Virus record (IMG/VR): IMGVR_UViG_3300032116_000004
Location: 124,001-188,000 of that record
Strand: one strand, 5' to 3'
DNA length: 64,000 nt
The notes under the pieces: model-generated
What the model was told of the DNA's origin: nothing
Seen by the model: only the letters and a program-made list of their open reading frames with translations
Databases searched by the model: none
Part shown: positions 1 through 64,000 of the stretch, piece by piece
Layout: each line of letters opens with the position of its first letter
Numbering within the stretch: position 1 is the stretch's first letter
Made by a program: the position numbers and the translations under genes

Positions 1-316
1 CGGTGGTGTGGATATCAGTCCCATTGGAGACTGCATGAAAACTGAAGTGTGGGCCATGGGTCGTGAACTGGGCGTGTTGCAAGATATCATTGATGCCGCT
101 CCCACTGATGGTTTATGGGCAGATGGTCGCACTGACGAACAACAGTTAGGCATGACCTACGCCGACCTTGAAGTGGCCATGCGCATGGACCAGGGCGAAA
201 TACAGTGCGATAACAAAGAGCTCAAGAAAAATCTAAAACGATATCGAGAGATCCGTGCTCGCAATCTACACAAGATGCAGGCTATTCCGGTGTGTAAATT
301 CAAAGATCAAGAATGA
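1..316 (+). CDS. nadE: NH3-dependent NAD+ synthetase, C-terminal part (5'-truncated by window)
   Basis: DISPIGDCMKTEVWAMGRELG...PTDGLWADGRTDEQQLGMTY matches the NadE C-terminal motifs. Confidence 0.85.
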   Translation, partial: GGVDISPIGDCMKTEVWAMGRELGVLQDIIDAAPTDGLWADGRTDEQQLGMTYADLEVAMRMDQGEIQCDNKELKKNLKRYREIRARNLHKMQAIPVCKFKDQE

Positions 317-22103: not shown

Positions 22104-23209
22104 GTTATTGTCCTTTGCCATTCCGACATGTTTTCATTGAGCCACGAGGTATCAAGCCTTGTTGCAGTTTCACAGAGACTGCTCCGATCACTGTGACTCA
22201 GTGGTTGTCCAGTGATCGATTGAGGAATTTGCAACAAAACATCCTGTCAGGATCCATAGACTCTGGATGTGCTGACTGTATCCGTAACGAACAACAGCAT
22301 GGTGTGGGCACCAGACTGGGAGCGTTGCAACACTATGGTTCCACTCCTGTGTCAGACACTGATATAGATTATGTGGATTATCGTTCCAGCAACGTCTGCA
22401 ACTTTCGATGCCGGTCATGCGAACCTTATTTTTCCAACGGTATCGCACAAGATGTGCGCCAGAGCGAATTCTTACAAACTCTCTATCAGATTCCGCCAGA
22501 AAAAACCGCCACAGTGTCAGACAAACAATGGATCTTGGACAACATATCGACCATTGATAGACTGATGTTCACCGGCGGTGAACCTACCTTATTGCCCGAA
22601 GTAAAAGAAATAGTCAATCGTATACGACGTGAGCAGTTAGATACCAAGATCATCATGATCACCAATGGCAGCTTCCGTGATCCATGGTGGTTGGAAATCG
22701 CCAGCACCATGCCCAATGTTAATTTCACTGTGAGTCTTGATGCTGTGGGCCCAGCTGCAGAAATCATACGCCACGGCACCAGTTGGTCGCAGATCGAGCG
22801 CAACGTCCTGTATCTAGCCAACCATGGTCACAGTGTGAACTTCAGCACAGTGATAACGCAACTAAATTTTTTCCAACTTGGACCCTTGCTGGCATTTATC
22901 AACATCGTCCGGAAATTCAACGATCGTCCCAACGGACGCACACAGTTCATACAGATATGCAACCATCCTAGATACTTCTCTCCCATTAACTGGCCAGATC
23001 ATATGCGTCCTGCGGCCATTGACTATCTTGATTGTTTGTTGGCTCTGGATTTTGTAGATTCTGCACGTGATGTCCTGGTAGATCTGCGCAACAACATCAT
23101 CCAGCATGAATTTGACTCCGATGCATGGACCACTGCCCAACGTGTGAACCTAGAACTAGACGTCTTGAGAAAACAAGACCATACTTGGCTATTTGAGCCC
23201 ACAAAATAA
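22100..23209 (+). CDS. Radical SAM protein with N-terminal SPASM/twitch-like Cys cluster
   Basis: CNFRCRSC, TGGEP, KPCC...CADC. Confidence 0.85.
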   Translation: MSYCPLPFRHVFIEPRGIKPCCSFTETAPITVTQWLSSDRLRNLQQNILSGSIDSGCADCIRNEQQHGVGTRLGALQHYGSTPVSDTDIDYVDYRSSNVCNFRCRSCEPYFSNGIAQDVRQSEFLQTLYQIPPEKTATVSDKQWILDNISTIDRLMFTGGEPTLLPEVKEIVNRIRREQLDTKIIMITNGSFRDPWWLEIASTMPNVNFTVSLDAVGPAAEIIRHGTSWSQIERNVLYLANHGHSVNFSTVITQLNFFQLGPLLAFINIVRKFNDRPNGRTQFIQICNHPRYFSPINWPDHMRPAAIDYLDCLLALDFVDSARDVLVDLRNNIIQHEFDSDAWTTAQRVNLELDVLRKQDHTWLFEPTK

Positions 23210-51660: not shown

Positions 51661-52601
51661 AACTCAGCAGATTAATCACCTACAAACACATGGTCGACGG
51701 GTTGCATATCAGTCACATCCAGGACCAAATAGAAACTGAACTAAAACAGATCCACACTGATCTTTCCATACAAAATATAGATTTTGATAATCTCAAATCT
51801 GAAATCGAAAAGCAGAGCCAAATGATACGGCAAAGCATGACAGCCATTGAATCATTGCTGGCTCAATTTAAAAAAAATCTACATGGCTTCGTGGACAGCA
51901 TAGAAGAGCCTTATTACGCCCGGAGCGAAAGCCTTTATCAAGAGAGTCGCAAAGATTCTGCTGAATACACGCTGGATCAATTGCAGTTCAAAAAACTGCT
52001 GTATGAACCGGCCACCAATGAATTTTTCCAAAGCCGACTGAAATTGCATTCGAACTTCAAATGGCCGGCCTTGGAGATTCGTCCTGGATTTGGAGATCTC
52101 ACTCCATGTCTTGTGGCCTGCGATCCTTTGTATCTAGTTGACACCAATGATGCACTCCTGCAACCTGTCAAAAAAATGTTTACTCCAGAATACCAGCGAC
52201 GCATCAGATATTACACCATCGACGAATCGGCCAAGCACATTCTCAACCAATTGCCCCGACAACAGTTTGGTATTATAGTAGCAGTGAATTTTTTTAACTT
52301 CCGTCCTCTTCCTTTGATCAAAAAATACGTGCAGGAATCGTTCTCGCTGTTGAAACCTGGAGGATCCTTGATTTTTACCTATAATAACTGTGACTATCCA
52401 ATAGGTGTTGACAATTTTGAAAATTCGTATTATTGTTATACACCAGGACATCAAATCGCTGAAATCTGTAAACAAGCAGGATTCAGGATAGCGGCCAGTT
52501 TTGATCTAGAGAACAATGTGAGTTGGCTCGAACTACAAAGACCGGGAAGACTGAGTAGCATACGTGGCGGACAGGCTTTAGGCAAAATACAATCACTTTA
52601 A
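51657..52601 (+). CDS. Class I SAM-dependent methyltransferase with N-terminal coiled coil
   Basis: LEIRPGFG, LVD, LLKPGG. Confidence 0.65.
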   Translation: MKLSRLITYKHMVDGLHISHIQDQIETELKQIHTDLSIQNIDFDNLKSEIEKQSQMIRQSMTAIESLLAQFKKNLHGFVDSIEEPYYARSESLYQESRKDSAEYTLDQLQFKKLLYEPATNEFFQSRLKLHSNFKWPALEIRPGFGDLTPCLVACDPLYLVDTNDALLQPVKKMFTPEYQRRIRYYTIDESAKHILNQLPRQQFGIIVAVNFFNFRPLPLIKKYVQESFSLLKPGGSLIFTYNNCDYPIGVDNFENSYYCYTPGHQIAEICKQAGFRIAASFDLENNVSWLELQRPGRLSSIRGGQALGKIQSL

Positions 52602-52612
52602 CGGAGAACCAA

Positions 52613-53344
52613 ATGAGAGACTTTTTATTAGACTTAGTAGAACACACACATGATCTCGGTTGCATCGACCTAATCAAGATCACAGGCACAGACAAAGAAA
52701 CTGTGATAGATGCCTTGGCTGAGGACAAGAGCGTGGTCGTGAATGCACGATTCGCCACGCCAGTGGCTGAATTCATGGGCACGTTCGGCATGCCCAATCT
52801 CAGCAAATTAAAGATCCTGATTAACTTGCAGGAGTATCGCGAACACGCCACCATCACTGTGAATCGCCAAGACCGTAATGGTGTGGACTCGCCGGTAGGC
52901 ATGCATTTTGAGAACAAAGTAGGAGACTTCAAGAACGACTATCGATTCATGGTCGCAGAAGTGGTCAGCGAAAAACTCAAACAGTTTAAGATGAAACCAG
53001 TGACCTGGCATGTGGAATTCGAGCCCACAGTGGCCGCTATCCAGCGTCTCAAGATGCAGGCACAGGCCAATGCCGAAGAAACTTCATTCATGGCCAAAAC
53101 CGAAGGCACTGATCTCAAGTTTTTCTTTGGTGATCACTCCACACACGCAGGCAACTTCGTGTTCCAACCTGCGGTCAGCGGCAAACTCACCCGTCCATGG
53201 TTATGGCCAGTCCAGCAGTTCATCGCTATCATGAATCTCACTGGTGACAAGACTGTGCGTTTCAGCGACGATGGTATTGCCAAGATCACTGTGAACTCAG
53301 GCATCGCCACTTACGATTACATGTTACCGGCCTTGAGCAAGTGA
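52613..53344 (+). CDS. Sliding clamp (gp45-like)
   Basis: 243 aa beta-rich protein next to polymerase; clamp loader present in window. Confidence 0.6.
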   Translation: MRDFLLDLVEHTHDLGCIDLIKITGTDKETVIDALAEDKSVVVNARFATPVAEFMGTFGMPNLSKLKILINLQEYREHATITVNRQDRNGVDSPVGMHFENKVGDFKNDYRFMVAEVVSEKLKQFKMKPVTWHVEFEPTVAAIQRLKMQAQANAEETSFMAKTEGTDLKFFFGDHSTHAGNFVFQPAVSGKLTRPWLWPVQQFIAIMNLTGDKTVRFSDDGIAKITVNSGIATYDYMLPALSK

Positions 53345-53982
53345 TCAGAAATGTAGTCCGTTACCAGCCTCCTGATATCTGGGGAGTGTTGTGTATAGAC
53401 ATCTGGCAAGATGCTCGCACCGACGAGTTTTACCAAACGTTCCTCCAGAGATTGTCTAAATATCCAGTGGGTGCTGTGGTTAACTGCACCTTGGATCTGG
53501 TGATTGACTATGCGGATGTGAGCGTGTATAATACACTTGATAGATACCACTGGCGATCAACAGATACCCAAGAACAAATACGCAACATGATGCTACTAGA
53601 TCTCGTCAAAGCCAGTGGGCAAAACAGGACCAGTCGCTTGATACATGATGCTTTGTTTGACCAAAACACTGTGCATATCAGCCAAAAGCAAACATTTAAC
53701 TATCATGTGGATCGGTTCTTTCCTGACATAAAGGATTGGATCGTGCTTGGCAGTGCCTGGGGCAAGTGTTTACACTACGGACCATTGGGTATAGATAAAT
53801 TGGTAGATCTACCAAATTGGAGATTCCATATCTTTCCTCAATGGAGTATACAGACAGAAACTCAGCAGGCACCGGATCTGCAACAGATACACGACGATTA
53901 TTTTGTATGGGCACCCATCGAAGATGATGGGTATAGACTGATAACAAGAGCACAAAATCACAAATGGATAGAGACGACTTAA
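53341..53982 (+). CDS. Hypothetical protein
   Basis: GTG-start coupled ORF. Confidence 0.6.
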   Translation: MIRNVVRYQPPDIWGVLCIDIWQDARTDEFYQTFLQRLSKYPVGAVVNCTLDLVIDYADVSVYNTLDRYHWRSTDTQEQIRNMMLLDLVKASGQNRTSRLIHDALFDQNTVHISQKQTFNYHVDRFFPDIKDWIVLGSAWGKCLHYGPLGIDKLVDLPNWRFHIFPQWSIQTETQQAPDLQQIHDDYFVWAPIEDDGYRLITRAQNHKWIETT

Positions 53983-55487
53983 CATCTAAACAGCAAGACT
54001 ATGCTGTGTTCCTCCCGGCCATCTCCAGTTTCTACGCTGGATACATCGGTCGCGAACGCCATGGTGTAGGACTGGATGCAGGTCGGTTGCCCTCGGCCAT
54101 TGGTGACATGGAAGCCATGAACTGGCTCAATCCTACCAAGGCTTTGTTTCCCTATCGTTGGAGCTTGTATTCCGCAGGACACGCCAATCTAGATTTGAAT
54201 AAGTTTGATGCCAAAGAGGACATGATCCGCAACAGAGATCCCAACACCATCATGCTGGCAGACTCAGGTGGATTCCAGATCGCCAAAGGTGTATGGCCCG
54301 GGCGCTGGGCAGATCCCACAGATAAAAAGTCAGAGCAACAACGAGAAAAAGTTCTTAAATGGCAGATGGGCATAGCCACATACGGAATGACCATGGACAT
54401 ACCCACATGGACATTCCGAGACCCCAAGGCTGCTGAAGCATCGGGTATTCACAGTTATGATGATGCTGTCACAGCCACACAATACAACAACGAATTCTGG
54501 ATCGCTAATCGCTACGGCGATACCCGGATCTTGAACGTGCTCCAAGGCGGTAACCATGCCGAGGCCGATCATTGGTATGATCTCATGAAACACTATTCTG
54601 ATCCCAAGCGTTATCCAGATCGGCATTTCAATGGATGGGGCATGGGTGGCCAGAACATGTGTGACGTGCATCTCATACTCCGCCGCTTGATACATCTCAT
54701 ACATGATGGACTGTTAGAAAAAGGTGTGCATGACTGGATGCACTTCTTGGGCACTTCAAAGTTGGAATATGCCTGTCTGCTCACAGACGTCCAACGTGCC
54801 ATAAGAAAATATCACAATGCCAATTTCACCATAAGTTTTGACTGTGCCAGCCCGTTCCTGGCCACTGCCAATGGACAGATATACACACAGCTCAGGACTG
54901 AAAACAGAGGCAAGTGGAGTTACATGATGAGCCCCACAGCAGACGATAAAAAATATGCCACGGACACTCGTGCATTCCGAGATGCTGTGCTACAGGACCG
55001 GATACATGACACATTTGAAGATAGCCCTATATCTGCCCGTATGAAGATCCAGGATGTGTGCATCTATAAACCCGGCGATTTGAACAAAATTGGCAAAGAA
55101 GGTCGCACATCGTGGGACTCTTTCTCTTACGCACTAATGATGGGTCACAATGTGTGGCATCATATCCGGGCGGTACAAGAAGCCAATCGGAGATATGATG
55201 CAGGAGAAGTTCCCGGAATGCTTGTGCGAGAAACCTTTGATCGTGTATACTTTAGAGACTTAGTAGATACCATTTTCCAACAACGTGATCGCAATCGTAG
55301 TTTGACTATCATAGATGAAAACTCTAAATTCTGGGACCAGATCATCGGCACACGAGGGTTCACGGGTAAACGCACTACCAATGCGCATACTCAATTCAAC
55401 GCTTTCTTTGATGTGGAAGATGATGACAGTTCCGAAGAAGAATTTGATCAATCCAAACTAGACGCCCTGGAGAACCTAAATGTATGA
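53964..55487 (+). CDS. TGT-fold guanine transglycosylase (DpdA-like)
   Basis: LADSGGFQ, TMDIP, VLQG, GWGMGG, HFLG, SFDCASP, HN. Confidence 0.75.
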   Translation: MDRDDLTSKQQDYAVFLPAISSFYAGYIGRERHGVGLDAGRLPSAIGDMEAMNWLNPTKALFPYRWSLYSAGHANLDLNKFDAKEDMIRNRDPNTIMLADSGGFQIAKGVWPGRWADPTDKKSEQQREKVLKWQMGIATYGMTMDIPTWTFRDPKAAEASGIHSYDDAVTATQYNNEFWIANRYGDTRILNVLQGGNHAEADHWYDLMKHYSDPKRYPDRHFNGWGMGGQNMCDVHLILRRLIHLIHDGLLEKGVHDWMHFLGTSKLEYACLLTDVQRAIRKYHNANFTISFDCASPFLATANGQIYTQLRTENRGKWSYMMSPTADDKKYATDTRAFRDAVLQDRIHDTFEDSPISARMKIQDVCIYKPGDLNKIGKEGRTSWDSFSYALMMGHNVWHHIRAVQEANRRYDAGEVPGMLVRETFDRVYFRDLVDTIFQQRDRNRSLTIIDENSKFWDQIIGTRGFTGKRTTNAHTQFNAFFDVEDDDSSEEEFDQSKLDALENLNV

Positions 55488-55683
55488 GAATCGCATCAAG
55501 CACCTAGAGCATGTCCACGAAATGCTGGACAAAAAAATTGATGTCATGGAACGGACCGGTGTGTTCGAAGACAACAACATACACGATCTCAAAAAACAAC
55601 GATTGCAGGTCAGAGACCAGTTGGCCGAATTGCGCAGGAAACAGCATGAACATGATCAAGAAGTTGACCAAGGAGATGATTGA
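55480..55683 (+). CDS. DUF465/YdcH-like small coiled-coil protein
   Basis: HEMLDKKI...LKKQRLQVRDQL. Confidence 0.65.
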   Translation: MYENRIKHLEHVHEMLDKKIDVMERTGVFEDNNIHDLKKQRLQVRDQLAELRRKQHEHDQEVDQGDD

Positions 55684-56195
55684 TGGATAGGCCCGGACAC
55701 AACAACGCAGAATTCTTTTTCGGCCGAGAAGTGGAACATACTCCGGCCTTGGACCAGCACACGCTGTTCGTGATAGGTTATCAGTCAGTGGAATCCATAG
55801 AACAGGCCTTGGCCCAATCCACACAGGATACCCAGCACATCTTTTTTGGGGCCAATGATTCATATCGTCCCAAGACCAATCCTGACTATGTTGGTTGGGA
55901 AAATGTCATACAAACTTTCCTGGGTCGTGGATATTGGTGTAGCCTGGATATACCTTTCCAGTATGTGGAAGAATTCCACGAGGGTGGGCTGTGTGAGCAT
56001 GATAGATTCATCCCCATCATCAAGATTCCCATTCCTTATATAAAATTGTGGAACTACAACACTTGTATCAAGATCGATGACAAGGATTTTGCGGCTACCA
56101 ATCCTGGAGTATGGGTCCATAATCTACATGATGTGCTAGATAGAGAAAAATTCACTGATTGGTCTAAATACGATAAAGATCTTGTAGTATCATGA
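55680..56195 (+). CDS. Hypothetical protein
   Basis: Coupled ORF. Confidence 0.7.
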   Translation: MMDRPGHNNAEFFFGREVEHTPALDQHTLFVIGYQSVESIEQALAQSTQDTQHIFFGANDSYRPKTNPDYVGWENVIQTFLGRGYWCSLDIPFQYVEEFHEGGLCEHDRFIPIIKIPIPYIKLWNYNTCIKIDDKDFAATNPGVWVHNLHDVLDREKFTDWSKYDKDLVVS

Positions 56196-56353
56196 GTTGG
56201 ATTTTTATGATGTTTATGCACGGCTATATAATAGAAGTGGACAGTTTTATCTCCAGGCAGGCATGTGTAGATAAAATGAAACAATACAATAGAGCCGCCG
56301 AACAGAGTGGCAGTATTTTCCTAGTATGGTGCGAATCAAGGCCTCGTGCTTGA
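56192..56353 (+). CDS. Small hypothetical protein (53 aa), not in ORF track
   Basis: ATGA overlap; fills the gap between genes. Confidence 0.5.
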   Translation: MSWIFMMFMHGYIIEVDSFISRQACVDKMKQYNRAAEQSGSIFLVWCESRPRA

Positions 56354-56377
56354 GACCTTTTATGTGGGGAGAAATTT

Positions 56378-56719
56378 TTGAAATACTGGACCGAACTTTC
56401 AGAAAGCGATCGCGCTCATGTTGCGTGGACTCTGAGTTTGGTATTGGCTGCCACTGTGCTGGTGCTTTATGCCATAGCCGCCAGTCGTGGACAGGATGTG
56501 GATTATTTCAAGACTCGCTTGGGACTCATGGAACAGCGTTTGAACTACATGGATCAAAAGATAGACAAAGTAGCACAGGGGCAACACGATCAAAAAGAAC
56601 ATCTCAATGAGATCCGTAGGATGCATGAAGCACAACAGCGGCAACTCGAAGACCAGCAAAAATGGCTGGATTTTTATAAAACCTTACCACAACTACCCAA
56701 ACCACCTACCAAGAGGTAA
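56378..56719 (+). CDS. Single-TM coiled-coil protein
   Basis: Hydrophobic helix then heptads. Confidence 0.65.
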   Translation: MKYWTELSESDRAHVAWTLSLVLAATVLVLYAIAASRGQDVDYFKTRLGLMEQRLNYMDQKIDKVAQGQHDQKEHLNEIRRMHEAQQRQLEDQQKWLDFYKTLPQLPKPPTKR

Positions 56720-56721
56720 TC

Positions 56722-57264
56722 ATGGCTCGACTTTATAGAATCACTCCATTGCAAAAAAAATCAGTGGAATATTTCGTGGATGTTTATGAAAAACTTCCAG
56801 ACGGAAGGATCAGAGGGTTTGATGTAACCGAAACTTGGCGATGGGGGCAGGCTTTCAGAGAAGAAGATGAACCAGTATATGAAAGCGAAGGCACTGTATT
56901 TTGTCGTCCTGAAGTTGGGTGGGGTTGCGAACTGGATGATTTGGTAGCCGTGCATGTGAATTATGGTTGCTGGGACATGGATGGCAATGTCTATGATGAT
57001 GGATTCACAGAAGAAGAAAAAGCCCAAATAGAAGCACTGTTGCGATGGGAAACCGAAGATGAAGATGGTCGTTGCGGAACCGGGTGGATCTATGACGGTG
57101 ATCATAATTGGGAAATCGAAGACGAGCACGTGGCCATATTGGAACCATACAAGGTTGACCTAGTGGATGAAGATGCTTATAATGAAGTAATAGAAGAGAA
57201 TGTCGCACTTGAAAAATTAACCCCATCAAATGGTTGGCCATTTCCAACTGAGGAATCTAAATAA
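56722..57264 (+). CDS. Acidic hypothetical protein
   Basis: GAGG SD, ORF. Confidence 0.7.
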   Translation: MARLYRITPLQKKSVEYFVDVYEKLPDGRIRGFDVTETWRWGQAFREEDEPVYESEGTVFCRPEVGWGCELDDLVAVHVNYGCWDMDGNVYDDGFTEEEKAQIEALLRWETEDEDGRCGTGWIYDGDHNWEIEDEHVAILEPYKVDLVDEDAYNEVIEENVALEKLTPSNGWPFPTEESK

Positions 57265-57488
57265 TGAATGTGAAAGAACTAGCAGAACAAGCGATCTATC
57301 GGGCTCAACACTTGCAAGAGTTTGAGGTATTGCGCGATGAAAACGACATGATGCTCAACGGAACCATACGCTATGACATTCGGCACAGGCCTGGCACACC
57401 ATATCGTATCACAGTGCCTGCAATGACACAGGCCGAAGCCGAAGTTCGTGTGGACGAGTGGATTGAAGAAATGAGGAATGTAGAATGA
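57264..57488 (+). CDS. Hypothetical protein
   Basis: Coupled ORF. Confidence 0.65.
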   Translation: MNVKELAEQAIYRAQHLQEFEVLRDENDMMLNGTIRYDIRHRPGTPYRITVPAMTQAEAEVRVDEWIEEMRNVE

Positions 57489-57979
57489 TTGTCAGCGAAA
57501 GAGAAACCATTGAACGTATCCGTGAAGCCGCTGATCGCAAAATCTGGGTCACATTCCAGAAAGAAGGTATCCATAAATACCCAGCGGCGCTGACAGATCC
57601 TATGTTGGCCACAGGAGATGAGTATGATGTTTCGTTCCTTGGTTATCCTCACCGTCACATCTTTCATTTCAGGGTGTGGATCGATGTGTTCCACAATGAC
57701 AGGGACATCGAGTTCATCCAATTCAAGCGGTGGCTCTTGTCGTTGTATTCCAGTGCCCAGCCAGCCGATGTCTTGCGTGATCGGACCGTTCACAATAATC
57801 AAAATTCAGTATTGAGCCTGGATTACAAGTCTTGCGAGATGATCGCAGACGATCTGTATCTGCAAATAGCAGGCCGTTATCCTGGCCGTGCTGTGTGGAT
57901 TGAAGTGGCCGAAGATGGTGAGAACGGCTGCCTCATCAAGTATAATACTCACCGTCCCTATCAATCAATCACAATCTAA
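57485..57979 (+). CDS. QueD/PTPS-like T-fold protein
   Basis: GIH, HRHIFHFRV, IEF, SCEMIA, VAED; context with folE and TGT-like gene. Confidence 0.65.
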   Translation: MIVSERETIERIREAADRKIWVTFQKEGIHKYPAALTDPMLATGDEYDVSFLGYPHRHIFHFRVWIDVFHNDRDIEFIQFKRWLLSLYSSAQPADVLRDRTVHNNQNSVLSLDYKSCEMIADDLYLQIAGRYPGRAVWIEVAEDGENGCLIKYNTHRPYQSITI

Positions 57980-57990
57980 GAGGAATCAAC

Positions 57991-58206
57991 ATGGGCAAGC
58001 CCACGTTCAAACCCAATCCCCGTAGCCGCCAGGTATGGGAAGACCTAGACCGTTATCTTGAATTCTGTTGCGATTATGGCTACAAGTTCAACGAAGCGGA
58101 TCTATACAATAACCGCGTGTATGCTTTCCAGCAGTTCCGCAAACTGGAAGCCGGCAAGGAGCCCCGAGACATGTGGGCACAAGATGCCAATCGGAGACCA
58201 CGCTGA
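57991..58206 (+). CDS. Hypothetical protein
   Basis: GAGGA SD. Confidence 0.7.
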   Translation: MGKPTFKPNPRSRQVWEDLDRYLEFCCDYGYKFNEADLYNNRVYAFQQFRKLEAGKEPRDMWAQDANRRPR

Positions 58207-59405
58207 TGCGTAAGATATTCTACATGGGGTTGGAAAGTTACGAAGCCCGCTACACTCTACAACTCACGGAATGGAACAAACGTGTGTTTGACCGCCGCGG
58301 CCTTGACGTTGTATATGTGCCTGGCTCCACCATTGATGATACCAAATCAATCAGTGTAGGACAGGTGCTAGACGCTCACGGTCGAAGTTATTTTTCAATG
58401 AGCCAGATGATGAACCTAGTGCAGATGATGCGCAACGGTGATGTCACTGATCAAGATGTGATCTATTTTGAAGACATGTTCCAACCCGGTATCGAGAGCT
58501 TACCTTATATTCTTGATCAAGTGCCTGACAATCTCAGACCGCGTATCTTTGTGCGCTGTTTGGCACAGGCCATTGACCCCGATGACTTCGTGCATGTCTG
58601 GGGCATGGCAGGCTGGATGTCGACTTATGAAAAGATGGTAAATCAGATCCCCAATGTCGCTGTGTTGGCCACCAACGAAGAGATGGTAGCACACATGCGC
58701 ATCGCAGGGTGGACTGCTCCCATCTACAATATTTCAGGCTTGGCATTTGGCAAGGCGGAAGTGCTCGAGCGCATAGGTGGCAAAGACCATGTTTGTGATT
58801 TTGACGTGAGACCATATCGTGTGGGATTTGCCGCACGATTTGATCAAGAGAAACAACCAGACTTCTACATGGATCTCATTGACATGTGGCATGAGCAAGG
58901 CAGATATCCGGTTGAGTTCGCTGTGTTCCAAGGAGGCCCATTGCGCTCAAACAACTCACGTTATATCGAACGTGCTCGTGACATGGAACGCCAAGGCCGC
59001 TTGAAAATCTATGAGAATCTAAAGAAAAATGATTACTATAATCTTCTCAACAATACTCGTGTGCTGTTTAATTGTGCTCTACAAGATTGGGTATCTAACA
59101 CAGTATCAGAAGCCGATACTCTTGGTTGTAATGTGTTATATCCTGCTTATCGCAGTTTCCCTGAAACCTTTGCCAACGATCCTAACCGACTTTATGTTCC
59201 TTGGTCGATAGATGATGCTTTCACCAAACTGGGGTTGTTGCTCAAAGAACCACACCACAACATGGGATTGATCTCTGACTGGACTGATGGCACAGTGGAT
59301 CGCATCGTAGATATCATCCAAGGCCAAGGCGAGCAATGGAATCGTTCAGGCAATCGCTACAGAGATCACGTGCCCGAAAACAAGTATCATGTGGTCAAAA
59401 TTTAA
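58206..59405 (+). CDS. GT-B fold glycosyltransferase
   Basis: FAARFDQEKQP, QDWVSNTVSEADTLGC, SFPE. Confidence 0.75.
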   Translation: MRKIFYMGLESYEARYTLQLTEWNKRVFDRRGLDVVYVPGSTIDDTKSISVGQVLDAHGRSYFSMSQMMNLVQMMRNGDVTDQDVIYFEDMFQPGIESLPYILDQVPDNLRPRIFVRCLAQAIDPDDFVHVWGMAGWMSTYEKMVNQIPNVAVLATNEEMVAHMRIAGWTAPIYNISGLAFGKAEVLERIGGKDHVCDFDVRPYRVGFAARFDQEKQPDFYMDLIDMWHEQGRYPVEFAVFQGGPLRSNNSRYIERARDMERQGRLKIYENLKKNDYYNLLNNTRVLFNCALQDWVSNTVSEADTLGCNVLYPAYRSFPETFANDPNRLYVPWSIDDAFTKLGLLLKEPHHNMGLISDWTDGTVDRIVDIIQGQGEQWNRSGNRYRDHVPENKYHVVKI

Positions 59406-59407
59406 AC

Positions 59408-60025
59408 ATGAAACAAAAAGTTTTAATCATTGGTGCCAGTGGTGGTATAGGATCATCATTATCGAGATTGATGTCAACCCATGATTATGATGTTGCAGGT
59501 TGGTCTTCACAGGATTTAGATCTAAATTATCCTGGAAGAATTTTTGATTGTGATTTTTCTCATTTTGACATTCTTGTAAATTGTGCCGGGCACAATCGTG
59601 GAACTTGGCGAGGTAATTTACAAAACACCTGGGAAAATCAACTCAGCATGATAATTGTAAACTATGCATCAAACTTTTTTTTGATGAAACATTATGCAAA
59701 ATCGAGAGATTCAGGAACTTACGTTTGGATCAGTTCCGACAGCATAGATCAACCAACTATCTACCAGGGTGTATATGCAGGTACCAAAATGGCCAGTAAG
59801 TTCAGTTTAGATCTTTTAGCCAAAGAAGCCGATCATATTACCGTATTATCTGCTAAAGTTGGACTTACCAAAACCAATTTCAGATATAGAAATTTTGAAG
59901 GCACCAAGTCCTGGCAGGAGGTAGAGGAGACTTATGGTGATAGAAAACTCATGTCAGCGGATTCGGTGGCGCAACGTCTTTTTCAAGGAATAAAAAGTAA
60001 CACAAAGGAAATGGTAATCACATGA
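59408..60025 (+). CDS. Short-chain dehydrogenase/reductase
   Basis: IGASGGIG, LVNCAG, YAGTK. Confidence 0.85.
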   Translation: MKQKVLIIGASGGIGSSLSRLMSTHDYDVAGWSSQDLDLNYPGRIFDCDFSHFDILVNCAGHNRGTWRGNLQNTWENQLSMIIVNYASNFFLMKHYAKSRDSGTYVWISSDSIDQPTIYQGVYAGTKMASKFSLDLLAKEADHITVLSAKVGLTKTNFRYRNFEGTKSWQEVEETYGDRKLMSADSVAQRLFQGIKSNTKEMVIT

Positions 60026-60399
60026 ACGGTAAGATAAAATTTATATTACCCGATATCAACGACAAAGCAATAGATTCGCGTGGTGCAATTTACAGCTTTA
60101 TACCACATGATGAAATTGTGGAATTCTGTTATGTTACTACCAAATCAGGACATGCTCGAGGTCATCATTACCACAAAGAGTTCGACGAATACCTCATGTT
60201 AGTGGATGGAGAAGGCATATATCTTGAGTTATTAGATGATGGAACTGTGAGGAAAATAGTAATAGGTGCTGGGCAAACTTTATATGTGCCTAGACTAACT
60301 CCACACACATTTATACCGATAACCGATTGTAAATCAGTAAGTTTTCTTACCAAACGATGGGACAACTGTCAAGAACCTATTACACCAATTAAGATATGA
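60022..60399 (+). CDS. Cupin, sugar 3,4-ketoisomerase (FdtA/WxcM)-like
   Basis: DSRG, RGHHYH..E, P...H. Confidence 0.65.
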   Translation: MNGKIKFILPDINDKAIDSRGAIYSFIPHDEIVEFCYVTTKSGHARGHHYHKEFDEYLMLVDGEGIYLELLDDGTVRKIVIGAGQTLYVPRLTPHTFIPITDCKSVSFLTKRWDNCQEPITPIKI

Positions 60400-60445
60400 A
60401 TTGGCGGAGAAATAAAATTTATATTGTTACAATAATGGAAAAATT

Positions 60446-61408
60446 ATGACTATGAAATCAAACTGTGTAATAGTAACGGGTGCTAGTGGTTATATAGGAG
60501 GACAAACTATTCTCCGACTTGGAGATGCTGGACATAATGTCATTGGTATTGATATACGGCCTGCTCCAGATCATTTGAAAAGTGCGTGCAATAGGTTCTA
60601 TCAAGAAGACTTTGCCAACGAATTTGCATTGAGCCTTTTGGACCAATTTGAACCACGGGCCATCATCCACTGTGCTGGCACTAGCCTCGTAGGCCCCAGC
60701 GTGACCAATCCTGAGCGTTACTATGACAACAATTTTGTCAAGACCAAACGCATGTTGGACCGACTGATCAAACATGAAATCAAGTCCAGAGTGATATTCA
60801 GTTCCAGCGCGGCTGTGTATGGAGAACCTGTGATGACTCCGTGTTCTGAATTGGATCCGCCTCTGCCCGTGAGTCCCTATGGTGAGAGCAAACTCATGAT
60901 AGAAATGGCGTTAAACAGTTATAGCCGTGCTTATGGACTAGACTATGTGAGTTTCCGTTACTTCAACGCCTGTGGGGCTGATCCCCGTGCCCGTCACGGT
61001 CAAGCCAATGCCGCTACTCACATCATTGCCAGAGTTCTGGAAAGCATGAGAGACGGAAAAGAGTTTGTGCTCAATGGTGAAAATTATCCGACCCAGGATG
61101 GAACTTGTGTGAGAGACTACATTCACGTAGATGATCTTGCCCGTGCGCACGAGATGGCCATAGAGCCGGAAATTCCTGCTGGCGTGTATAATCTTGGATC
61201 GTCATCAGGATACAGCAATCGCGAGATCATGGATCTGGCACAAAAAGTCGCAGATAAATCTTTAAAATTTTCTGCAGGTCCTCAGAGAGAAGGTGATCCT
61301 GCTGTGCTCACGGCTGCCAGCGACAAATTCAATTTAGTGAGTGCATGGGTTCCTAGATACAATATCGAAGAAATAATCCAGCATGCGTGGGCCTGGTATA
61401 CACGATGA
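60446..61408 (+). CDS. galE: UDP-glucose 4-epimerase
   Basis: TGASGYIG, FSSSAAVYG, YGESK, RYFNACG, DGTCVRDYIHV. Confidence 0.9.
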   Translation: MTMKSNCVIVTGASGYIGGQTILRLGDAGHNVIGIDIRPAPDHLKSACNRFYQEDFANEFALSLLDQFEPRAIIHCAGTSLVGPSVTNPERYYDNNFVKTKRMLDRLIKHEIKSRVIFSSSAAVYGEPVMTPCSELDPPLPVSPYGESKLMIEMALNSYSRAYGLDYVSFRYFNACGADPRARHGQANAATHIIARVLESMRDGKEFVLNGENYPTQDGTCVRDYIHVDDLARAHEMAIEPEIPAGVYNLGSSSGYSNREIMDLAQKVADKSLKFSAGPQREGDPAVLTAASDKFNLVSAWVPRYNIEEIIQHAWAWYTR

Positions 61409-61986
61409 GTTTTGACCCAATTTTTCAATTTGAAAAACAATTATCAGAATACACCGGTGCACCTTATGCTGTGATGACTGATTGTTGCACACATGCTATA
61501 GAGTTATGTTTACGGCATGAACTACCTAACTGGACATCATTCACTGCTTTTACCTATCTTTCTGTGCCCATGCTGATGCATAAACTTGGGATCGAATATA
61601 AATTGGTGCAGGAAGATTGGATTGGCGAATATCGTTTTCACAATACCCGTATCTGGGATTCGGCACGCCGGCTAGAACGCGGTATGTATCGACCTGGCAT
61701 GATGCAATGTTTGAGCTTTGGCCGAGGTAAACCGTTGGAGATAGGGCGAGGCGGTGCCATATTGCTTGACGATGCTCGGGCGTATCGTGTATTATTAGAA
61801 CAGAGATATGATGGTAGAGACTTGACCATCATCCCCTGGCAAGACCAAAAAACTTTTAGGGTGGGGTATCATTATAAACCAACCATAGAAGAGGCAGAAA
61901 AAGGTATCGAATTGCTACCAAAAGTAGATGAGAAACCTAAATATGTCTCATACCCGGATCTAAGACAGATCCAGATCATTGACTAG
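61405..61986 (+). CDS. Short DegT/DnrJ/EryC1/StrS-like PLP protein
   Basis: FEKQLSEYTGAPYAV..CT.A, DSA, LSFGRGKPL..GRGG. Confidence 0.7.
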   Translation: MSFDPIFQFEKQLSEYTGAPYAVMTDCCTHAIELCLRHELPNWTSFTAFTYLSVPMLMHKLGIEYKLVQEDWIGEYRFHNTRIWDSARRLERGMYRPGMMQCLSFGRGKPLEIGRGGAILLDDARAYRVLLEQRYDGRDLTIIPWQDQKTFRVGYHYKPTIEEAEKGIELLPKVDEKPKYVSYPDLRQIQIID

Positions 61987-62015
61987 CCATCCTCGGCTCT
62001 AACTCGGAGAAAAAA

Positions 62016-62852
62016 ATGACAGAAAAAAAACAAGAATTATTTGATGCGATAAAAAACACAAAGTTGGTAAGCGAAGCACCTTTCCATCCTGGCTATGAAG
62101 ATGCTGCCATGAATCTTACCAACACAGGACTGGACGCCATGGTCAATGATCGAGGTTATCAAACGGCCTATCTCGGCGATGCTATCCGATTCCAAATGCG
62201 GCGTGAAGGCAAAAGATTCTGGGCTGGAGACAATGTATCGGAATATGTGAATCCTGCCACCAAAGAAATCCTGATCAATGAGGCCACCGAAGCGTTTGAG
62301 TTAGTGCTAGATCGTTTGCTGATCGATAGAGAAACGGATCCCAACTCCAAGGGCACCGCACGTCGTTTGGCCAAGATGTATTTCAATGAGATCATGGCCG
62401 GAAGATATGAATCTGCACCCGACTGCACTGCTTTCCCCAACGACTCGGCAGACCGATACGAAGGCATGCTGGTGGTGCGCAGTGAGATCCGGAGCATGTG
62501 TAGCCATCACCATCAACCAGTGGTTGGAGTGGCCTATATTGGAATCTTGGCCGCACACAAACTCATCGGTCTCAGCAAATACACTCGCATCGCGCAATGG
62601 TGTAGCCGTCGCGGAACTCTACAAGAAGAATTGTGCAACGACATCGCCCGAGAGATCATGAAAGTGACCGAAAGTTCTGATGTAGGCGTATATGTGCAAG
62701 CCACGCATGGGTGTTGTGAAAATCGCGGCATCATGGCCCATTCTAGCCTTACCCAGACAACCGTTCTAAACGGTGCATTCCGGACGGACCCGGCTGTGAA
62801 AAAAGAGTTCATCGATAATATCAAACTGCAACAGGACTTTGCGCCTAGGTAA
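62016..62852 (+). CDS. folE: GTP cyclohydrolase I with N-terminal extension
   Basis: SMCSHHHQP, IGLSK, LQE, HGC..RG. Confidence 0.93.
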   Translation: MTEKKQELFDAIKNTKLVSEAPFHPGYEDAAMNLTNTGLDAMVNDRGYQTAYLGDAIRFQMRREGKRFWAGDNVSEYVNPATKEILINEATEAFELVLDRLLIDRETDPNSKGTARRLAKMYFNEIMAGRYESAPDCTAFPNDSADRYEGMLVVRSEIRSMCSHHHQPVVGVAYIGILAAHKLIGLSKYTRIAQWCSRRGTLQEELCNDIAREIMKVTESSDVGVYVQATHGCCENRGIMAHSSLTQTTVLNGAFRTDPAVKKEFIDNIKLQQDFAPR

Positions 62853-62928: not shown

Positions 62929-64000
62929 ATGGATTTCAAACGCAGTATCATTGCTGTATCAATCTCTGGCATAATGTCTACCTTGGCCGGCTGTGGGGGT
63001 GGTGGTGGTGGTGGCACTAGTTCAACGCTCGGTGGTTTTGTCCGATCAGAAGTTCCTTTCCATACTCCTGTGCGCATATCGTCGGCTATAGATCCTTTGG
63101 TCAAAGTCGATGGAGCGGCACCTGTATTTGATATCTTTGAAGCAAATGTCACTGGTAGTGGCAACGATATCATATTGGCAGGTAGACAAACACAATATGC
63201 CACACCCGAAACCTGGAGTAACAGCCGGATCAGTTTGTTCGCATGGCAAAACGGAACTTTAGTCGACCGCACTGCACAGTGGTTTCCGGGTGGTATCAAC
63301 GAAATACTAGGCACAGAACCCAGCGTGAAGTTTGCTGATCTATTCAACACAGGTCGCCAAGACATGTTGGTTGCACCCAGCACGGACATGCAACACTATG
63401 GCCCTGGTTATGTGTTCGCCAACCAAGGCACACATTTCAATCGCATATCAATTCCTCTCAACAATGTATGGGCCCACGACAGCGCCATCGCAGACATGGA
63501 CGGAGACGGTTTTAAAGATTTGCTGTTTGTCGATTATGGACCAAACACCACCTTGGCAATCAACAATCGAGTCAATAACTTTACCGCATATACCGATAGC
63601 AGAGGCACGGCCGGTGATCTGCGGTGGGGTGGATCCAGCATTGTTGCTGACAGTTTTCTAGGCAATGGACAGAAACAGATCATAGTAACTGACAATGCTT
63701 GTAATACTGCCAACGCCGCATGCAGTAATGCTCGCACCACCAAGATGTATAGCTACACCATCGTTGGAGGGCAACTGAATTATCAATACATAGCCGATCT
63801 TCCTGCACCATTGTTGGATCACAATGTGAGAGTGGTATCGCATGATTTCAACGAAGATGGACGACCCGATGCCATTGTTTTTAGCCGTCTTGGTTTCCAT
63901 ACCAAACAAAGTGCCATCCAATTCCTGAAAAACAACGGCGCCGCTGTGTTCCAAGATGTGACCACAGATACACTGGTCGGTTATGATACCAATACCTATT
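62929..64000 (+). CDS. Lipoprotein with FG-GAP/VCBS repeats (3'-truncated; missing from ORF track)
   Basis: MDFKRSIIAVSISGIMSTLAGC lipobox, poly-Gly, ADMDGDGFKDL and HDFNEDGRPDA; open to window end. Confidence 0.85.
   Translation, partial: MDFKRSIIAVSISGIMSTLAGCGGGGGGGTSSTLGGFVRSEVPFHTPVRISSAIDPLVKVDGAAPVFDIFEANVTGSGNDIILAGRQTQYATPETWSNSRISLFAWQNGTLVDRTAQWFPGGINEILGTEPSVKFADLFNTGRQDMLVAPSTDMQHYGPGYVFANQGTHFNRISIPLNNVWAHDSAIADMDGDGFKDLLFVDYGPNTTLAINNRVNNFTAYTDSRGTAGDLRWGGSSIVADSFLGNGQKQIIVTDNACNTANAACSNARTTKMYSYTIVGGQLNYQYIADLPAPLLDHNVRVVSHDFNEDGRPDAIVFSRLGFHTKQSAIQFLKNNGAAVFQDVTTDTLVGYDTNTY

What the first reader, a model, noticed from the sequence alone, without database searches (positions are those of the whole stretch)
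53964..62852. 7-deazaguanine pathway interleaved with glycosyltransferase and NDP-aminosugar genes
Seen: directly after polymerase and clamp come a TGT-fold protein with no CxCxxC zinc motif, a QueD-like gene and folE. Between the last two lie a GT-B glycosyltransferase, SDR, ketoisomerase-like cupin, GalE and DegT-like gene. Known: phage FolE/QueD/QueE/QueC plus DpdA insert 7-deazaguanines into DNA; cupin plus DegT typically make amino-deoxysugars. Inference: possible sugar-decorated deazaguanine DNA hypermodification, which I do not know to be described. queC/queE are not in this window, and the sugars could instead go to virion proteins or the host surface.
Basis: partly seen in the sequence, partly recalled or inferred. 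Interest (0 to 1): 0.75.

Follow-up and report, generated by a model that had tools for sequence, protein, structure and literature searches.

The report
Glycosyltransferase-linked 7-deazaguanine DNA modification module
A 316-kb phage carries, next to its DNA polymerase, genes to make a 7-deazaguanine base and swap it into DNA, together with a sugar-transferring enzyme found beside those genes in seven phage lineages, which suggests a sugar-bearing modified guanine that has not been described.

Summary
The 507-aa protein has a tRNA-guanine-transglycosylase fold, keeps all three catalytic aspartates and lacks the zinc motif. Structurally it is nearest to the phage DpdA2 proteins. The "QueD-like" gene is DpdL, a QueD paralogue with the published LxxxHRHxF signature. 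FolE, GalE, an SDR, a cupin and a GT4-type GT-B glycosyltransferase are real. The "DegT-like" gene is a conserved viral mini-DegT of about 200 aa. The "clamp" call is unsupported.

The rest of the genome holds QueD 3 kb beyond the reported region and QueE plus a phosphoribosyltransferase 12 kb beyond it. It holds no QueC. This is the FolE/QueD/QueE/DpdL gene set, without QueC, reported for phages with 7-deazaguanine DNA.

The glycosyltransferase lies beside DpdL and/or a DpdA-like gene in seven lineages:
- this metagenomic clade (61 of 61 informative loci)
- PA5oct-like phages
- Phosso
- ACP17
- BUDD/X1
- BCSR5
- cyanophage BUCT-ZZ01

The reverse does not hold: some DpdL phages lack the glycosyltransferase, as expected for an optional tailoring step.

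The genetic link is strong. That the sugar ends up on the deazaguanine is inference (probability about 0.4). I found no paper describing such a base.

The parts
49000..51660 (+). Family B DNA polymerase; upstream anchor of the conserved array
   Evidence: PF00136 and PF03104. Found in 77 of 80 related loci at the same relative position. 48% identical to the split PA5oct polymerase.
51657..52601 (+). 314-aa protein with a weak class-I SAM-methyltransferase likeness; function open
   Evidence: Pfam matches below cut-off. Syntenic in 66 of 80 loci.
52613..53344 (+). 243-aa conserved protein (phrog_12062), always just upstream of the TGT-like gene
   Evidence: PHROG E 7.5e-31. Present in 80 of 80 loci. 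Homologues sit upstream of the TGT-like gene in PA5oct (gp314, found in virions by mass spectrometry) and in Vibrio phage 2.275.O.
53341..53982 (+).
   Evidence: No Pfam, PHROG, PDB or phage match. Present in only 19 of 80 loci.
53964..55487 (+). DpdA-like DNA-guanine transglycosylase candidate: TGT fold, no zinc site, nearest subfamily DpdA2
   Evidence: AF2 pLDDT 90.6. Foldseek against PDB: top 50 hits all TGT, E 2e-7. hhalign against E. coli Tgt aligns DSGGFQ, D145, Q193, GWGMGG and D293. Invariant D100, D145 and D293. No CxCxxC in 56 of 56 members. BFVD hits include nt-1 DpdA2 at 1e-8.
55480..55683 (+). DUF465 small protein, variable
   Evidence: PF04325 E 1e-9. Present in 29 of 80 loci.
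55680..56195 (+). 171-aa conserved protein of unknown fold that travels with the TGT-like gene
   Evidence: Present in 71 of 80 loci, including relatives without the glycosyltransferase. A homologue lies directly upstream of ACP17 DpdA2 (E 6e-9). No family or PDB match.
57485..57979 (+). DpdL: QueD paralogue, proposed 7-carboxy-7-deazaguanine decarboxylase
   Evidence: Signature LGYPHRHIF = LxxxHRHxF (28 of 30 family members). tblastn to ACP17 (51%, 9e-34) and to phiST DpdL (33%, 1e-7). hhalign to QueD 86.8%. Present in 52 of 52 informative loci.
57991..58206 (+). 71-aa protein coupled to the glycosyltransferase
   Evidence: Always directly upstream of the glycosyltransferase and absent where it is absent. 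Fused to the glycosyltransferase in one 502-aa ORF in L085.
58206..59405 (+). GT4-type GT-B glycosyltransferase of a virus-specific family (ORF opens at 58173; conserved start is M12)
   Evidence: Alignments A2 and A3 keep R211, E215, K216 and E302 invariant. AF2 pLDDT 69.9. Foldseek best hits are BshA, a PBCV glycosyltransferase, BH4 glucosyltransferase and PimA, E 1e-9 to 1e-7. Adjacent to DpdL and/or DpdA-like genes in seven lineages.
59336..60025 (+). Short-chain dehydrogenase; lineage-specific insertion
   Evidence: PF00106 E 1e-13. In only 4 of 80 and 8 of 80 related loci.
60022..60399 (+). Small cupin (weak FdtA/WxcM likeness); lineage-specific insertion
   Evidence: Cupin_2 E 1e-6, FdtA E 9e-4. 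In 2 of 80 and 1 of 80 related loci.
60446..61408 (+). UDP-glucose 4-epimerase GalE; likely supplies the sugar donor
   Evidence: TIGR01179, 282.5 bits, above the cut-off of 262.3. Present in 38 of 44 loci with the glycosyltransferase and 0 of 8 without it.
61387..61986 (+). Mini-DegT (199 aa): shortened PLP-aminotransferase-like protein that keeps the SFxxxK lysine
   Evidence: PF01041, 34 bits, on residues 12-44 only. Aligns to the genome's full DegT at two blocks. Viral 190-200-aa DegT clusters. 193-234 aa in 12 relatives. In 35 of 44 loci with the glycosyltransferase and 0 of 8 without it.
62016..62852 (+). GTP cyclohydrolase I (FolE) with an N-terminal extension of about 90 aa; first step of the 7-deazaguanine pathway
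   Evidence: PF01227 E 9e-39; phrog_2197. In 52 of 52 glycosyltransferase-anchored loci with at least 7 kb downstream.
62929..64000 (+). FG-GAP repeat protein (794 aa, runs past the window end); separates FolE from HIT and QueD; variable
   Evidence: PF13517 and PF01839. In 15 of 80 loci.

Best explanation
The region is the front half of one replication-linked module for a 7-deazaguanine DNA modification.

Proposed steps:
1. FolE, QueD and QueE turn GTP into 7-carboxy-7-deazaguanine.
2. There is no QueC, so the pathway does not go on to preQ0. Instead DpdL, a QueD paralogue, processes the base. Its published proposal is decarboxylation to 7-deazaguanine.
3. A zinc-less, DpdA2-like transglycosylase (53964-55487) exchanges guanine in phage DNA for that base.
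4. A phosphoribosyltransferase in the module either salvages the released guanine or makes the deazapurine nucleotide.
5. A dedicated GT4 glycosyltransferase acts as an optional tailoring layer. It comes with a 71-aa partner, GalE as donor supplier and a mini-DegT. It adds a hexose-type sugar to the deazaguanine-derived base, either in DNA or on the free base before insertion.

This phage has further inserted an SDR, a cupin and, beyond the window, a 3,6-dideoxy/branched-sugar kit into the same module. These may diversify the sugar.

Shown: folds, catalytic residues, pathway gene content, synteny and co-occurrence.
Inferred: DNA as the target of the transglycosylase, the DpdL reaction, and the acceptor of the glycosyltransferase.
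For: - TGT fold and catalytic triad of the 507-aa protein.
- Its homologues sit beside QueF, YhhQ-like, QueC, Gat and FolE in Vibrio phage 2.275.O, and 3 kb from QueE in PA5oct.
- PA5oct DNA resists restriction enzymes with G-containing sites and is hit by nucleases that sense modified G (PMC12191111).
- DpdL signature and homology.
- QueD, QueE and the phosphoribosyltransferase are present and QueC is absent.
- The glycosyltransferase keeps the GT4 fold and invariant R, E, K, E residues.
- The glycosyltransferase is adjacent to DpdL and/or a DpdA-like gene in PA5oct-likes, Phosso, ACP17, BUDD/X1, BCSR5 and BUCT-ZZ01. In the clade this holds for 61 of 61 loci, and FolE is present in 52 of 52.
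- p71, the glycosyltransferase, GalE and mini-DegT are gained or lost as one unit on the TGT-like tree (one change, support 100/99). p71 and the glycosyltransferase are fused in L085.
- No ThyA-family hydroxymethylase is present that could supply a pyrimidine acceptor.
- Co-expression of dpdA and dpdL from ACP17 and phiST, without the intervening glycosyltransferase gene, gave no dDG in E. coli. The authors suspected a missing enzyme.
Against: - No chemistry has been measured for any phage that carries this glycosyltransferase.
- 7-deazaguanine, the product proposed for DpdL, offers no hydroxyl or amine side chain to glycosylate. Either DpdL does something else here or the sugar goes elsewhere.
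- phiST makes dDG with DpdL but has no glycosyltransferase. Several other DpdL phages also lack it, so it is not needed for the base itself.
- The model's nearest solved relatives (BshA, BH4 glucosyltransferase, MshA, PimA) act on small molecules or lipids. T4-type DNA glucosyltransferases are not among the top 50 hits.
- The glycosyltransferase model is only moderately confident (pLDDT 69.9).
- Six of the seven lineages were found by searching for these very genes. Lineage counts are therefore small and not a random sample.
Confidence: 0.45

Rival explanations
1. The module makes plain 7-deazaguanine-type DNA (dDG or dCDG), as in phiST. The glycosyltransferase belongs to the module but does not decorate the final DNA base. 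It might glycosylate a pterin or deazapurine intermediate, as cyanobacterial BH4 glucosyltransferase does with a pterin. It might modify a protein partner, or act as a non-catalytic helper of DpdA and DpdL.
For: - Fold hits include UDP-glucose:tetrahydrobiopterin glucosyltransferase and BshA, both with small-molecule acceptors.
- FolE, a PTPS-family enzyme and an SDR are also the gene set for pterin glycosides.
- dDG has no handle for a sugar.
- The ACP17 dpdA and dpdL pair was inactive without further factors.
Against: - The catalytic GT4 residues are invariant over 20-25% identity, which argues for real sugar transfer.
- GalE co-varies with the glycosyltransferase.
- QueE and the DpdA-like gene are not needed for a pterin glycoside, yet always accompany it.
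- A free glycosylated intermediate has no evident benefit for a phage.
Confidence: 0.25
2. The sugar genes have nothing to do with DNA. They are auxiliary genes that alter host surface polysaccharide or glycosylate virion proteins, and they merely sit in a permissive spot of the replication module.
For: - The SDR, the cupin and the RfbH/E1 deoxysugar kit occur only in this phage and resemble O-antigen pathways.
- Jumbo phages and cyanophages often carry polysaccharide genes (general knowledge).
- An FG-GAP protein lies inside the array.
Against: - This fits the lineage-specific genes but not the core glycosyltransferase. It lies beside DpdL or DpdA in seven lineages with otherwise different genomes, including Kyanoviridae, Arenbergviridae and Busanvirus.
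- It is never next to structural genes in these loci.
- The next most similar glycosyltransferase outside the family (PhiXhv group) has a different neighbourhood, which marks the family boundary.
Confidence: 0.15
3. The modified base enters DNA before replication. The phosphoribosyltransferase turns the deazapurine into a nucleotide, as in tubercidin and toyocamycin biosynthesis. It is converted to the dNTP and used by the phage polymerase. The TGT-like protein then acts on tRNA, or only in repair and salvage.
For: - A PF00156 phosphoribosyltransferase is conserved in this genome, PA5oct and BUCT-ZZ01, inside the module.
- A HIT-family nucleotide hydrolase or transferase is conserved next to FolE and QueD.
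- phiST has a MazG-like gene next to DpdL and shows 100% replacement.
Against: - Every characterised phage with 7-deazaguanine DNA encodes a DpdA. DpdA1 and bDpdA are shown to act on DNA.
- The transglycosylase is the most conserved gene of the module (80 of 80 loci).
- The phosphoribosyltransferase can equally be read as guanine salvage.
Confidence: 0.15

Closest known systems
DpdA2 DNA transglycosylases (Vibrio phage nt-1 type; Hutinet et al. 2019, PMC6884629)
   Same: Viral TGT-fold proteins next to 7-deazaguanine synthesis genes, too divergent for Pfam TGT. ACP17, BUDD and BUCT-ZZ01 carry DpdA2-type proteins (36% identity to nt-1). These score 93.6-96.5% by hhalign against the window's family. 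Foldseek E 1e-8 to nt-1 R9TGF0.
   Different: No BLAST-level similarity: tblastn with P0001 finds only PA5oct-likes, Phosso and Vibrio 2.275.O. The window's protein is longer (507 aa). The family has over 900 clusters at 50% identity. It is best called a sister subfamily that has not been named.
DpdL-type dDG system of Cellulophaga phage phiST (Cui et al. 2023, PMC10516641)
   Same: FolE, QueD, QueE and DpdL with no QueC, placed next to the DNA polymerase. The DpdL signature LxxxHRHxF is shared.
   Different: phiST uses a 259-aa DpdA3 and an ATPase, and has no glycosyltransferase, GalE or mini-DegT. Its DpdA3 is only marginally similar to the window's protein (hhalign 45%, Foldseek 2e-3).
Pseudomonas jumbo phage PA5oct gp316-gp322
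   Same: Same order: polB, p243 homologue, TGT-like (35% identity), glycosyltransferase (23%, E 7e-15), DpdL (53%), phosphoribosyltransferase, QueE, RNase H. The phage is reported to resist enzymes cutting at G-containing sites and to be targeted by sensors of modified G.
   Different: All of these genes except QueE are annotated as hypothetical, and no nucleoside chemistry is published. PA5oct lacks GalE, mini-DegT and the deoxysugar insertions.
T4 alpha- and beta-glucosyltransferases acting on 5-hydroxymethylcytosine DNA, and other DNA glycan systems (bioRxiv 10.1101/2023.12.21.572611)
   Same: Concept: a phage glycosyltransferase adds sugar to an already modified base as an optional extra layer. 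It is present in only some phages that make the base.
   Different: The acceptor there is a hydroxymethyl pyrimidine. No ThyA-family hydroxymethylase is present here. T4-type enzymes are not among the top 50 fold matches.
Glycosylated queuosine in eukaryotic tRNA (QTMAN/GTDC1, a GT4-like enzyme; named in Pfam as PF12038)
   Same: The only known sugar transfer onto a 7-deazaguanine derivative. QTMAN-type clusters appear among language-model look-alikes of the glycosyltransferase (score 0.97).
   Different: The PF12038 HMM finds nothing in the genome, even at E 10. The N-domain search gives generic GT-B families. Substrates there are tRNA and a cyclopentenediol hydroxyl. This is a resemblance only.
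UDP-glucose:tetrahydrobiopterin glucosyltransferase (BGluT) and BshA (GT4)
   Same: Best solved structural matches, TM 0.55-0.61 by target. BGluT's acceptor is a pterin made through FolE and PTPS.
   Different: 10-12% identity. Those pathways need neither QueE nor a TGT-like enzyme.

Membership tests
TGT/DpdA superfamily | (beta/alpha)8 TGT-type barrel | tested here: met
   AF2 pLDDT 90.6, with eight strand-helix repeats. Foldseek against PDB: top 50 hits all Z. mobilis TGT, E 2e-7, TM by target 0.50-0.54.
TGT/DpdA superfamily | Three invariant aspartates: general acid/base, base recognition and nucleophile (PMC10164549) | tested here: met
   D100, D145 and D293 are invariant in 56 sequences. 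They align to E. coli Tgt DSGGFQ, FDECT and MFDCV.
TGT/DpdA superfamily | Structural zinc site CxCx2Cx22H | tested here: not met
   0 of 56 members have CxCxxC, and there is no conserved Cys cluster. The site is conserved in TGTs and bacterial DpdA.
TGT/DpdA superfamily | Guanine exchange on DNA | not testable with these tools
   Only neighbourhood evidence and the PA5oct restriction phenotype.
DpdA2 subfamily | Sequence similarity to nt-1 DpdA2 | tested here: inconclusive
   No tblastn hit at 1e-5. Profile match to ACP17 DpdA2 is 96.5%. Foldseek gives 1e-8 to nt-1.
DpdL | QueD paralogue with LxxxHRHxF in place of CxxxHGH | tested here: met
   LGYPHRHIF in the window's gene; 28 of 30 family members carry the motif. 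hhalign to QueD 86.8%.
DpdL | Occurs with DpdA, FolE, QueD and QueE but without QueC | tested here: met
DpdL | Decarboxylates 7-carboxy-7-deazaguanine | not testable with these tools
   Unproven even for phiST.
GT4 (GT-B, retaining) glycosyltransferases | Two-Rossmann GT-B fold | tested here: met
   Foldseek PDB and Swiss-Prot hits are all GT4 enzymes, E 1e-9 to 1e-7, TM 0.55-0.64. The model is of moderate quality (pLDDT 69.9).
GT4 (GT-B, retaining) glycosyltransferases | Pfam Glycos_transf_1 above the gathering score | tested here: not met
   17.6 bits against a cut-off of 26.4. Some close homologues carry PF00534.
GT4 (GT-B, retaining) glycosyltransferases | Conserved diphosphate-binding and catalytic R/K and E residues in the C-terminal domain | tested here: inconclusive
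   R211, E215, K216 and E302 are invariant across members at 20-87% identity. Their mapping to the EX7E motif was done by eye only.
QTMAN (tRNA-queuosine mannosyltransferase) | PF12038 N-terminal domain | tested here: not met
   No match in the genome at E up to 10.
GalE | TIGR01179 equivalog score | tested here: met
   282.5 bits against a cut-off of 262.3.
DegT/DnrJ/EryC1 aminotransferases | Full fold-type-I domain of about 360 aa with a PLP lysine | tested here: not met
   199 aa; the Pfam match covers profile positions 26-58 only. The SFxxxK lysine block is retained. It belongs to a viral short-DegT family.
GTP cyclohydrolase I | PF01227 above cut-off | tested here: met
   133 bits against a cut-off of 27. 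NCBIfam equivalog scores are below cut-off.

The most novel reading that the evidence does not exclude
These phages carry a glycosylated 7-deazaguanine in their DNA. This would be the first sugar-bearing purine-derived base in any genome. It would be made by a DpdA2-like transglycosylase, DpdL and a dedicated GT4 enzyme. It would be widespread: each of the two core proteins (transglycosylase and GT4 enzyme) has thousands of metagenomic homologues, and cultured carriers include PA5oct, a candidate for phage therapy. In this particular phage the sugar would be further diversified by an in-module deoxysugar kit.
Probability: 0.4. Interest if true: 0.9.

Novelty: new variant of a known kind. Interest (0 to 1): 0.78.

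Why it matters
7-deazaguanine DNA modifications are a known phage counter-defence. All eight bases described so far are small, unglycosylated derivatives (PMC10516641). A sugar layer on a purine-derived base would add a new chemical class of DNA hypermodification.

It would also explain two published loose ends:
- why the ACP17 dpdA and dpdL pair was inactive when expressed without the gene between them
- what the unidentified G modification of PA5oct is

It would matter for restriction, CRISPR and type IV defence escape, and for sequencing and engineering of jumbo phages used in therapy. Several cultured phages carry the same triad of genes, so the question can be tested directly.

Independently of the sugar question, the analysis names an abundant, unannotated, zinc-less DpdA-like family.

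Tried and rejected
- Megablast of the region against phage records found nothing.
- The PF01702 (TGT) HMM finds nothing in the genome. Sequence and profile searches of PDB with the TGT-like protein also found nothing. Only fold search and hhalign reach TGT.
- The PF06508 (QueC) hit just upstream of the window is NadE. It is rejected as QueC.
- The 207-aa radical SAM protein (L024:6869-7492) looked like a QueE candidate. It scores best as prokaryotic viperin-like. The real QueE-like gene was found by homology to the phage QueEs.
- ORF 55680-56195 as QueD: no similarity to QueD. Its family profile finds nothing in PDB.
- NVP2275O_469 of Vibrio phage 2.275.O is not a homologue of the glycosyltransferase.
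- The QTMAN lead from the Atlas search was not borne out by the PF12038 HMM or by the N-domain search.
- The PhiXhv/Ep032 glycosyltransferase hit lies with GlmS and a BshB-like gene, without deazaguanine genes. I treat it as outside the family.
I refolded with permitted rows only, which lowered diversity and probably model confidence.
- Supplementary tables of Cui et al. are not held, so their subfamily label for ACP17 DpdA could not be read.
- Literature searches for a glycosylated or hexose-bearing deazaguanine in phage DNA found no such report.
- Sequencing-read tools and the complex predictor were not used. Neither bears on base chemistry.

Full report
**Setting.** The window is bases 124001-188000 of a 315,778-bp IMG/VR virus record estimated 91% complete. 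From 49000 to the window end all credible genes lie on the + strand.

**Checking the genes.**
- polB is clear.
- The ORF at 53964-55487 (507 aa) matches nothing in Pfam, PHROGs, NCBIfam or PDB by sequence.
- FolE (62016-62852), an SDR, a small cupin and a full epimerase-family protein are supported by Pfam. The epimerase-family protein passes the GalE equivalog cut-off.
- The 410-aa ORF has only a sub-threshold Glycos_transf_1 match.
- The "DegT-like" ORF is 199 aa and matches DegT only at residues 12-44.
- The ORF read as a clamp (53341-53982) matches nothing anywhere.

**The TGT-like protein.**
- It belongs to a very large family without annotation. More than 7,500 90%-identity cluster representatives pass E 0.001 among the 8,000 candidates scored, none with an informative name. 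There are 913 clusters at 50% identity.
- An alignment of 56 diverse members has invariant S70, D100, S101, G103, D145, P147, H260, G263 and D293.
- The AlphaFold model is confident (pLDDT 90.6, pTM 0.90) and shows eight strand-helix repeats.
- The best 50 PDB matches by Foldseek are all Zymomonas tRNA-guanine transglycosylase (E about 2e-7).
- hhalign against E. coli Tgt (84%, E 7e-6) lines up MLADSGGFQ with LTDSGGFQ, MDIPT with FDECT, LQGG with IQGS, GWGMGG with GYAVGG, and FDCASP with FDCVMP. These include the general acid/base, the base-recognition aspartate and the nucleophile.
- TGTs and bacterial DpdA share a structural CxCx2Cx22H zinc site (PMC10164549).
- In the viral structure library the nearest named proteins are phage "tRNA guanine transglycosylases" and the nt-1 protein that defines DpdA2 (E 1e-8). 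phiST DpdA3 is far weaker (2e-3).
- Among cultured phages, BLAST-level homologues exist only in PA5oct-like Pseudomonas jumbo phages, Sinorhizobium phage Phosso and Vibrio phage 2.275.O.
- In Vibrio phage 2.275.O the gene is followed by QueF, a YhhQ-family transporter, QueC, an amidotransferase and FolE.
- In PA5oct it lies 3 kb from QueE. A 2025 preprint reports that PA5oct DNA resists several enzymes with G in their sites, and that PA5oct is attacked by nucleases that sense modified G. No transglycosylase was identified there (PMC12191111).

**The rest of the pathway.**
- The only QueC-family hit in the genome is an NAD synthase.
- A true PTPS/QueD lies at G000 189788-190303, 1.8 kb past the window end and 3 kb past the reported region.
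- A QueE-like radical SAM gene, 40% identical to the annotated QueE of cyanophage BUCT-ZZ01, lies at 199082-199981. A PF00156 phosphoribosyltransferase lies at 197622-198194.
It carries LGYPHRHIF. This is the LxxxHRHxF signature by which Cui et al. 2023 distinguished DpdL, their proposed 7-carboxy-7-deazaguanine decarboxylase, from QueD (CxxxHGH).
- It hits ACP17 (51%, 9e-34) and phiST DpdL (33%, 1e-7). The motif is present in 28 of 30 family members, and the family aligns to QueD at 86.8%.
- Cui et al. found DpdL in phages that encode DpdA, FolE, QueD and QueE but not QueC. That is the content found here.

**The glycosyltransferase and its company.**
- Its conserved start is M12 (58206).
- The family is as abundant as the TGT-like family and very conserved.
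- The model (pLDDT 69.9) matches GT4 retaining glycosyltransferases only. These include BshA, a chlorovirus glycosyltransferase, cyanobacterial tetrahydrobiopterin glucosyltransferase, PimA and MshA.
- R211, E215, K216 and E302 stay invariant down to 20% identity.

Linkage within the clade:
- In 80 IMG/VR loci anchored on the TGT-like gene, the order polB, MT-like, p243, TGT-like, p171, DpdL, p71, glycosyltransferase, GalE, mini-DegT, FolE, HIT, QueD is kept down to 55% identity.
- In 80 loci anchored on the glycosyltransferase, 61 of 61 with at least 7 kb upstream hold the TGT-like gene. 52 of 52 with at least 7 kb downstream hold FolE. These loci are one clade, so they count as roughly one observation.

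Independent lineages:
- PA5oct-likes: TGT-like, glycosyltransferase, DpdL are consecutive.
- ACP17: p171 homologue, DpdA2, glycosyltransferase (hhalign 99.8%), DpdL, QueE.
- Xanthomonas phages BUDD and X1: FolE ... glycosyltransferase, "queuine tRNA-ribosyltransferase", DpdL, QueE.
- Burkholderia phage BCSR5.
- Sinorhizobium phage Phosso: DpdL and glycosyltransferase adjacent, FolE next, TGT-like elsewhere in the genome.
- Kyanoviridae phage BUCT-ZZ01: QueE, phosphoribosyltransferase, QueD, FolE, a second glycosyltransferase, DpdA-like, DpdL, glycosyltransferase at 65% identity.

The converse fails. The phiST group, RHph_I1_18, Bakedbeans, Ahp1 and D479 have DpdL but no glycosyltransferase. 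Eight related metagenomic loci have lost or never had p71, the glycosyltransferase, GalE and mini-DegT. They keep the TGT-like gene, p171 and DpdL, and most keep FolE. They form a single clade on the TGT-like tree (100/99 support). In L085, p71 and the glycosyltransferase are one ORF. The pattern is that of an optional tailoring unit attached to a core pathway.

**The other sugar genes.**
- The SDR and the cupin occur in at most a handful of relatives.
- Beyond the window, between QueD and the phosphoribosyltransferase, this phage has inserted two methyltransferases, a dTDP-glucose-4,6-dehydratase-like gene, an RfbH/E1-type 3-dehydrase (above the equivalog cut-off), split TPP-dependent E1 subunits and an RmlD-like reductase.
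- Most of these genes are absent from the related loci, and the rest occur in only a few.
- No PF00483 nucleotidyltransferase and no ThyA-family hydroxymethylase is present.

**Mechanism.**
- I rate the assignment of the region as a DpdL-type 7-deazaguanine DNA-modification module at about 0.85.
- I rate the glycosyltransferase as a functional member of that module at about 0.75.
- I rate a sugar on the deazaguanine-derived base as the product at about 0.4.

The main obstacle to the third claim is chemical. Plain 7-deazaguanine has no side-chain acceptor, and the nearest solved relatives of the glycosyltransferase include small-molecule enzymes, one of them acting on a pterin. The alternatives are glycosylation of an intermediate, a surface or virion glycan role for the lineage-specific genes, and a pre-replicative nucleotide route through the phosphoribosyltransferase. 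They are set out with their tests in the rival explanations.

**Known or new.**
- 7-deazaguanine DNA, DpdA subfamilies and DpdL are published.
- The literature searches found no report that treats the PA5oct-type zinc-less transglycosylase as a family, that links a GT4 enzyme to DpdL and DpdA, or that describes a glycosylated deazaguanine.
- Searches cover open-access papers and bioRxiv only.

Noticed in passing
whole genome G000 (e.g. 251-256 kb and 297-303 kb; one hit inside the window, at window 22385-22864): Fourteen ORFs match the radical SAM domain, eight of them above the Pfam cut-off, several in tandem clusters. That is unusually many for a phage.
   Followed up: partly
L018:4350-11625 (G000 190350-197625, just past the window end): A deoxysugar kit is nested between QueD and the phosphoribosyltransferase/QueE. 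It has two methyltransferases, a 4,6-dehydratase-like gene, an RfbH/E1-type 3-dehydrase (SFYPAHH, no PLP lysine), split TPP-dependent E1 alpha and beta subunits, and an RmlD-like reductase. Most of these genes are missing from the 160 related loci; a few occur in a small minority.
   Followed up: partly
L018:12603-13073 (G000 198603-199073): A 156-aa HhH-GPD base-excision glycosylase-like protein lies directly upstream of QueE. Its role in a base-exchange module is unclear.
   Followed up: no
L085:13833-15341: In one relative the 71-aa protein and the glycosyltransferase are fused into a single 502-aa ORF.
   Followed up: partly
L204:7212-8363 (Vibrio phage Bakedbeans gp176): The DpdL domain forms the C-terminal third of a 383-aa protein. 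The N-terminal part of about 260 aa is unidentified. This phage has no homologue of the glycosyltransferase.
   Followed up: no
L107:5093-8353 (Synechococcus phage BUCT-ZZ01): The cyanophage module holds a xanthine-guanine phosphoribosyltransferase between QueE and QueD. It also holds a second, unrelated GT4-like glycosyltransferase (447 aa) next to FolE.
   Followed up: partly
L018:3788-4303 and QueD genes of BUCT-ZZ01, phiST, ACP17 and RHph_I1_18: All five phage QueD proteins read CxxxHGY where the canonical QueD signature is CxxxHGH.
   Followed up: no
L017:8098-10316 (G000 122098-124316; the NadE gene runs into window 1-316): A Bax1-I/BI-1 family membrane protein and an NAD synthase (NadE) lie here. 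NadE produces the false QueC hit.
   Followed up: yes
window 62929-64000, continuing to L018:3313: A 794-aa FG-GAP repeat protein sits between FolE and HIT/QueD. It is present in only 15 of 80 relatives and looks like another insertion into the module.
   Followed up: no
L018:3310-3705: A HIT-family (HinT-like) nucleotide hydrolase or transferase lies next to QueD in many relatives (25 of 80 and 47 of 80 related loci, many of them too short to reach it), including most without the glycosyltransferase. It may act on a nucleotide intermediate.
   Followed up: no
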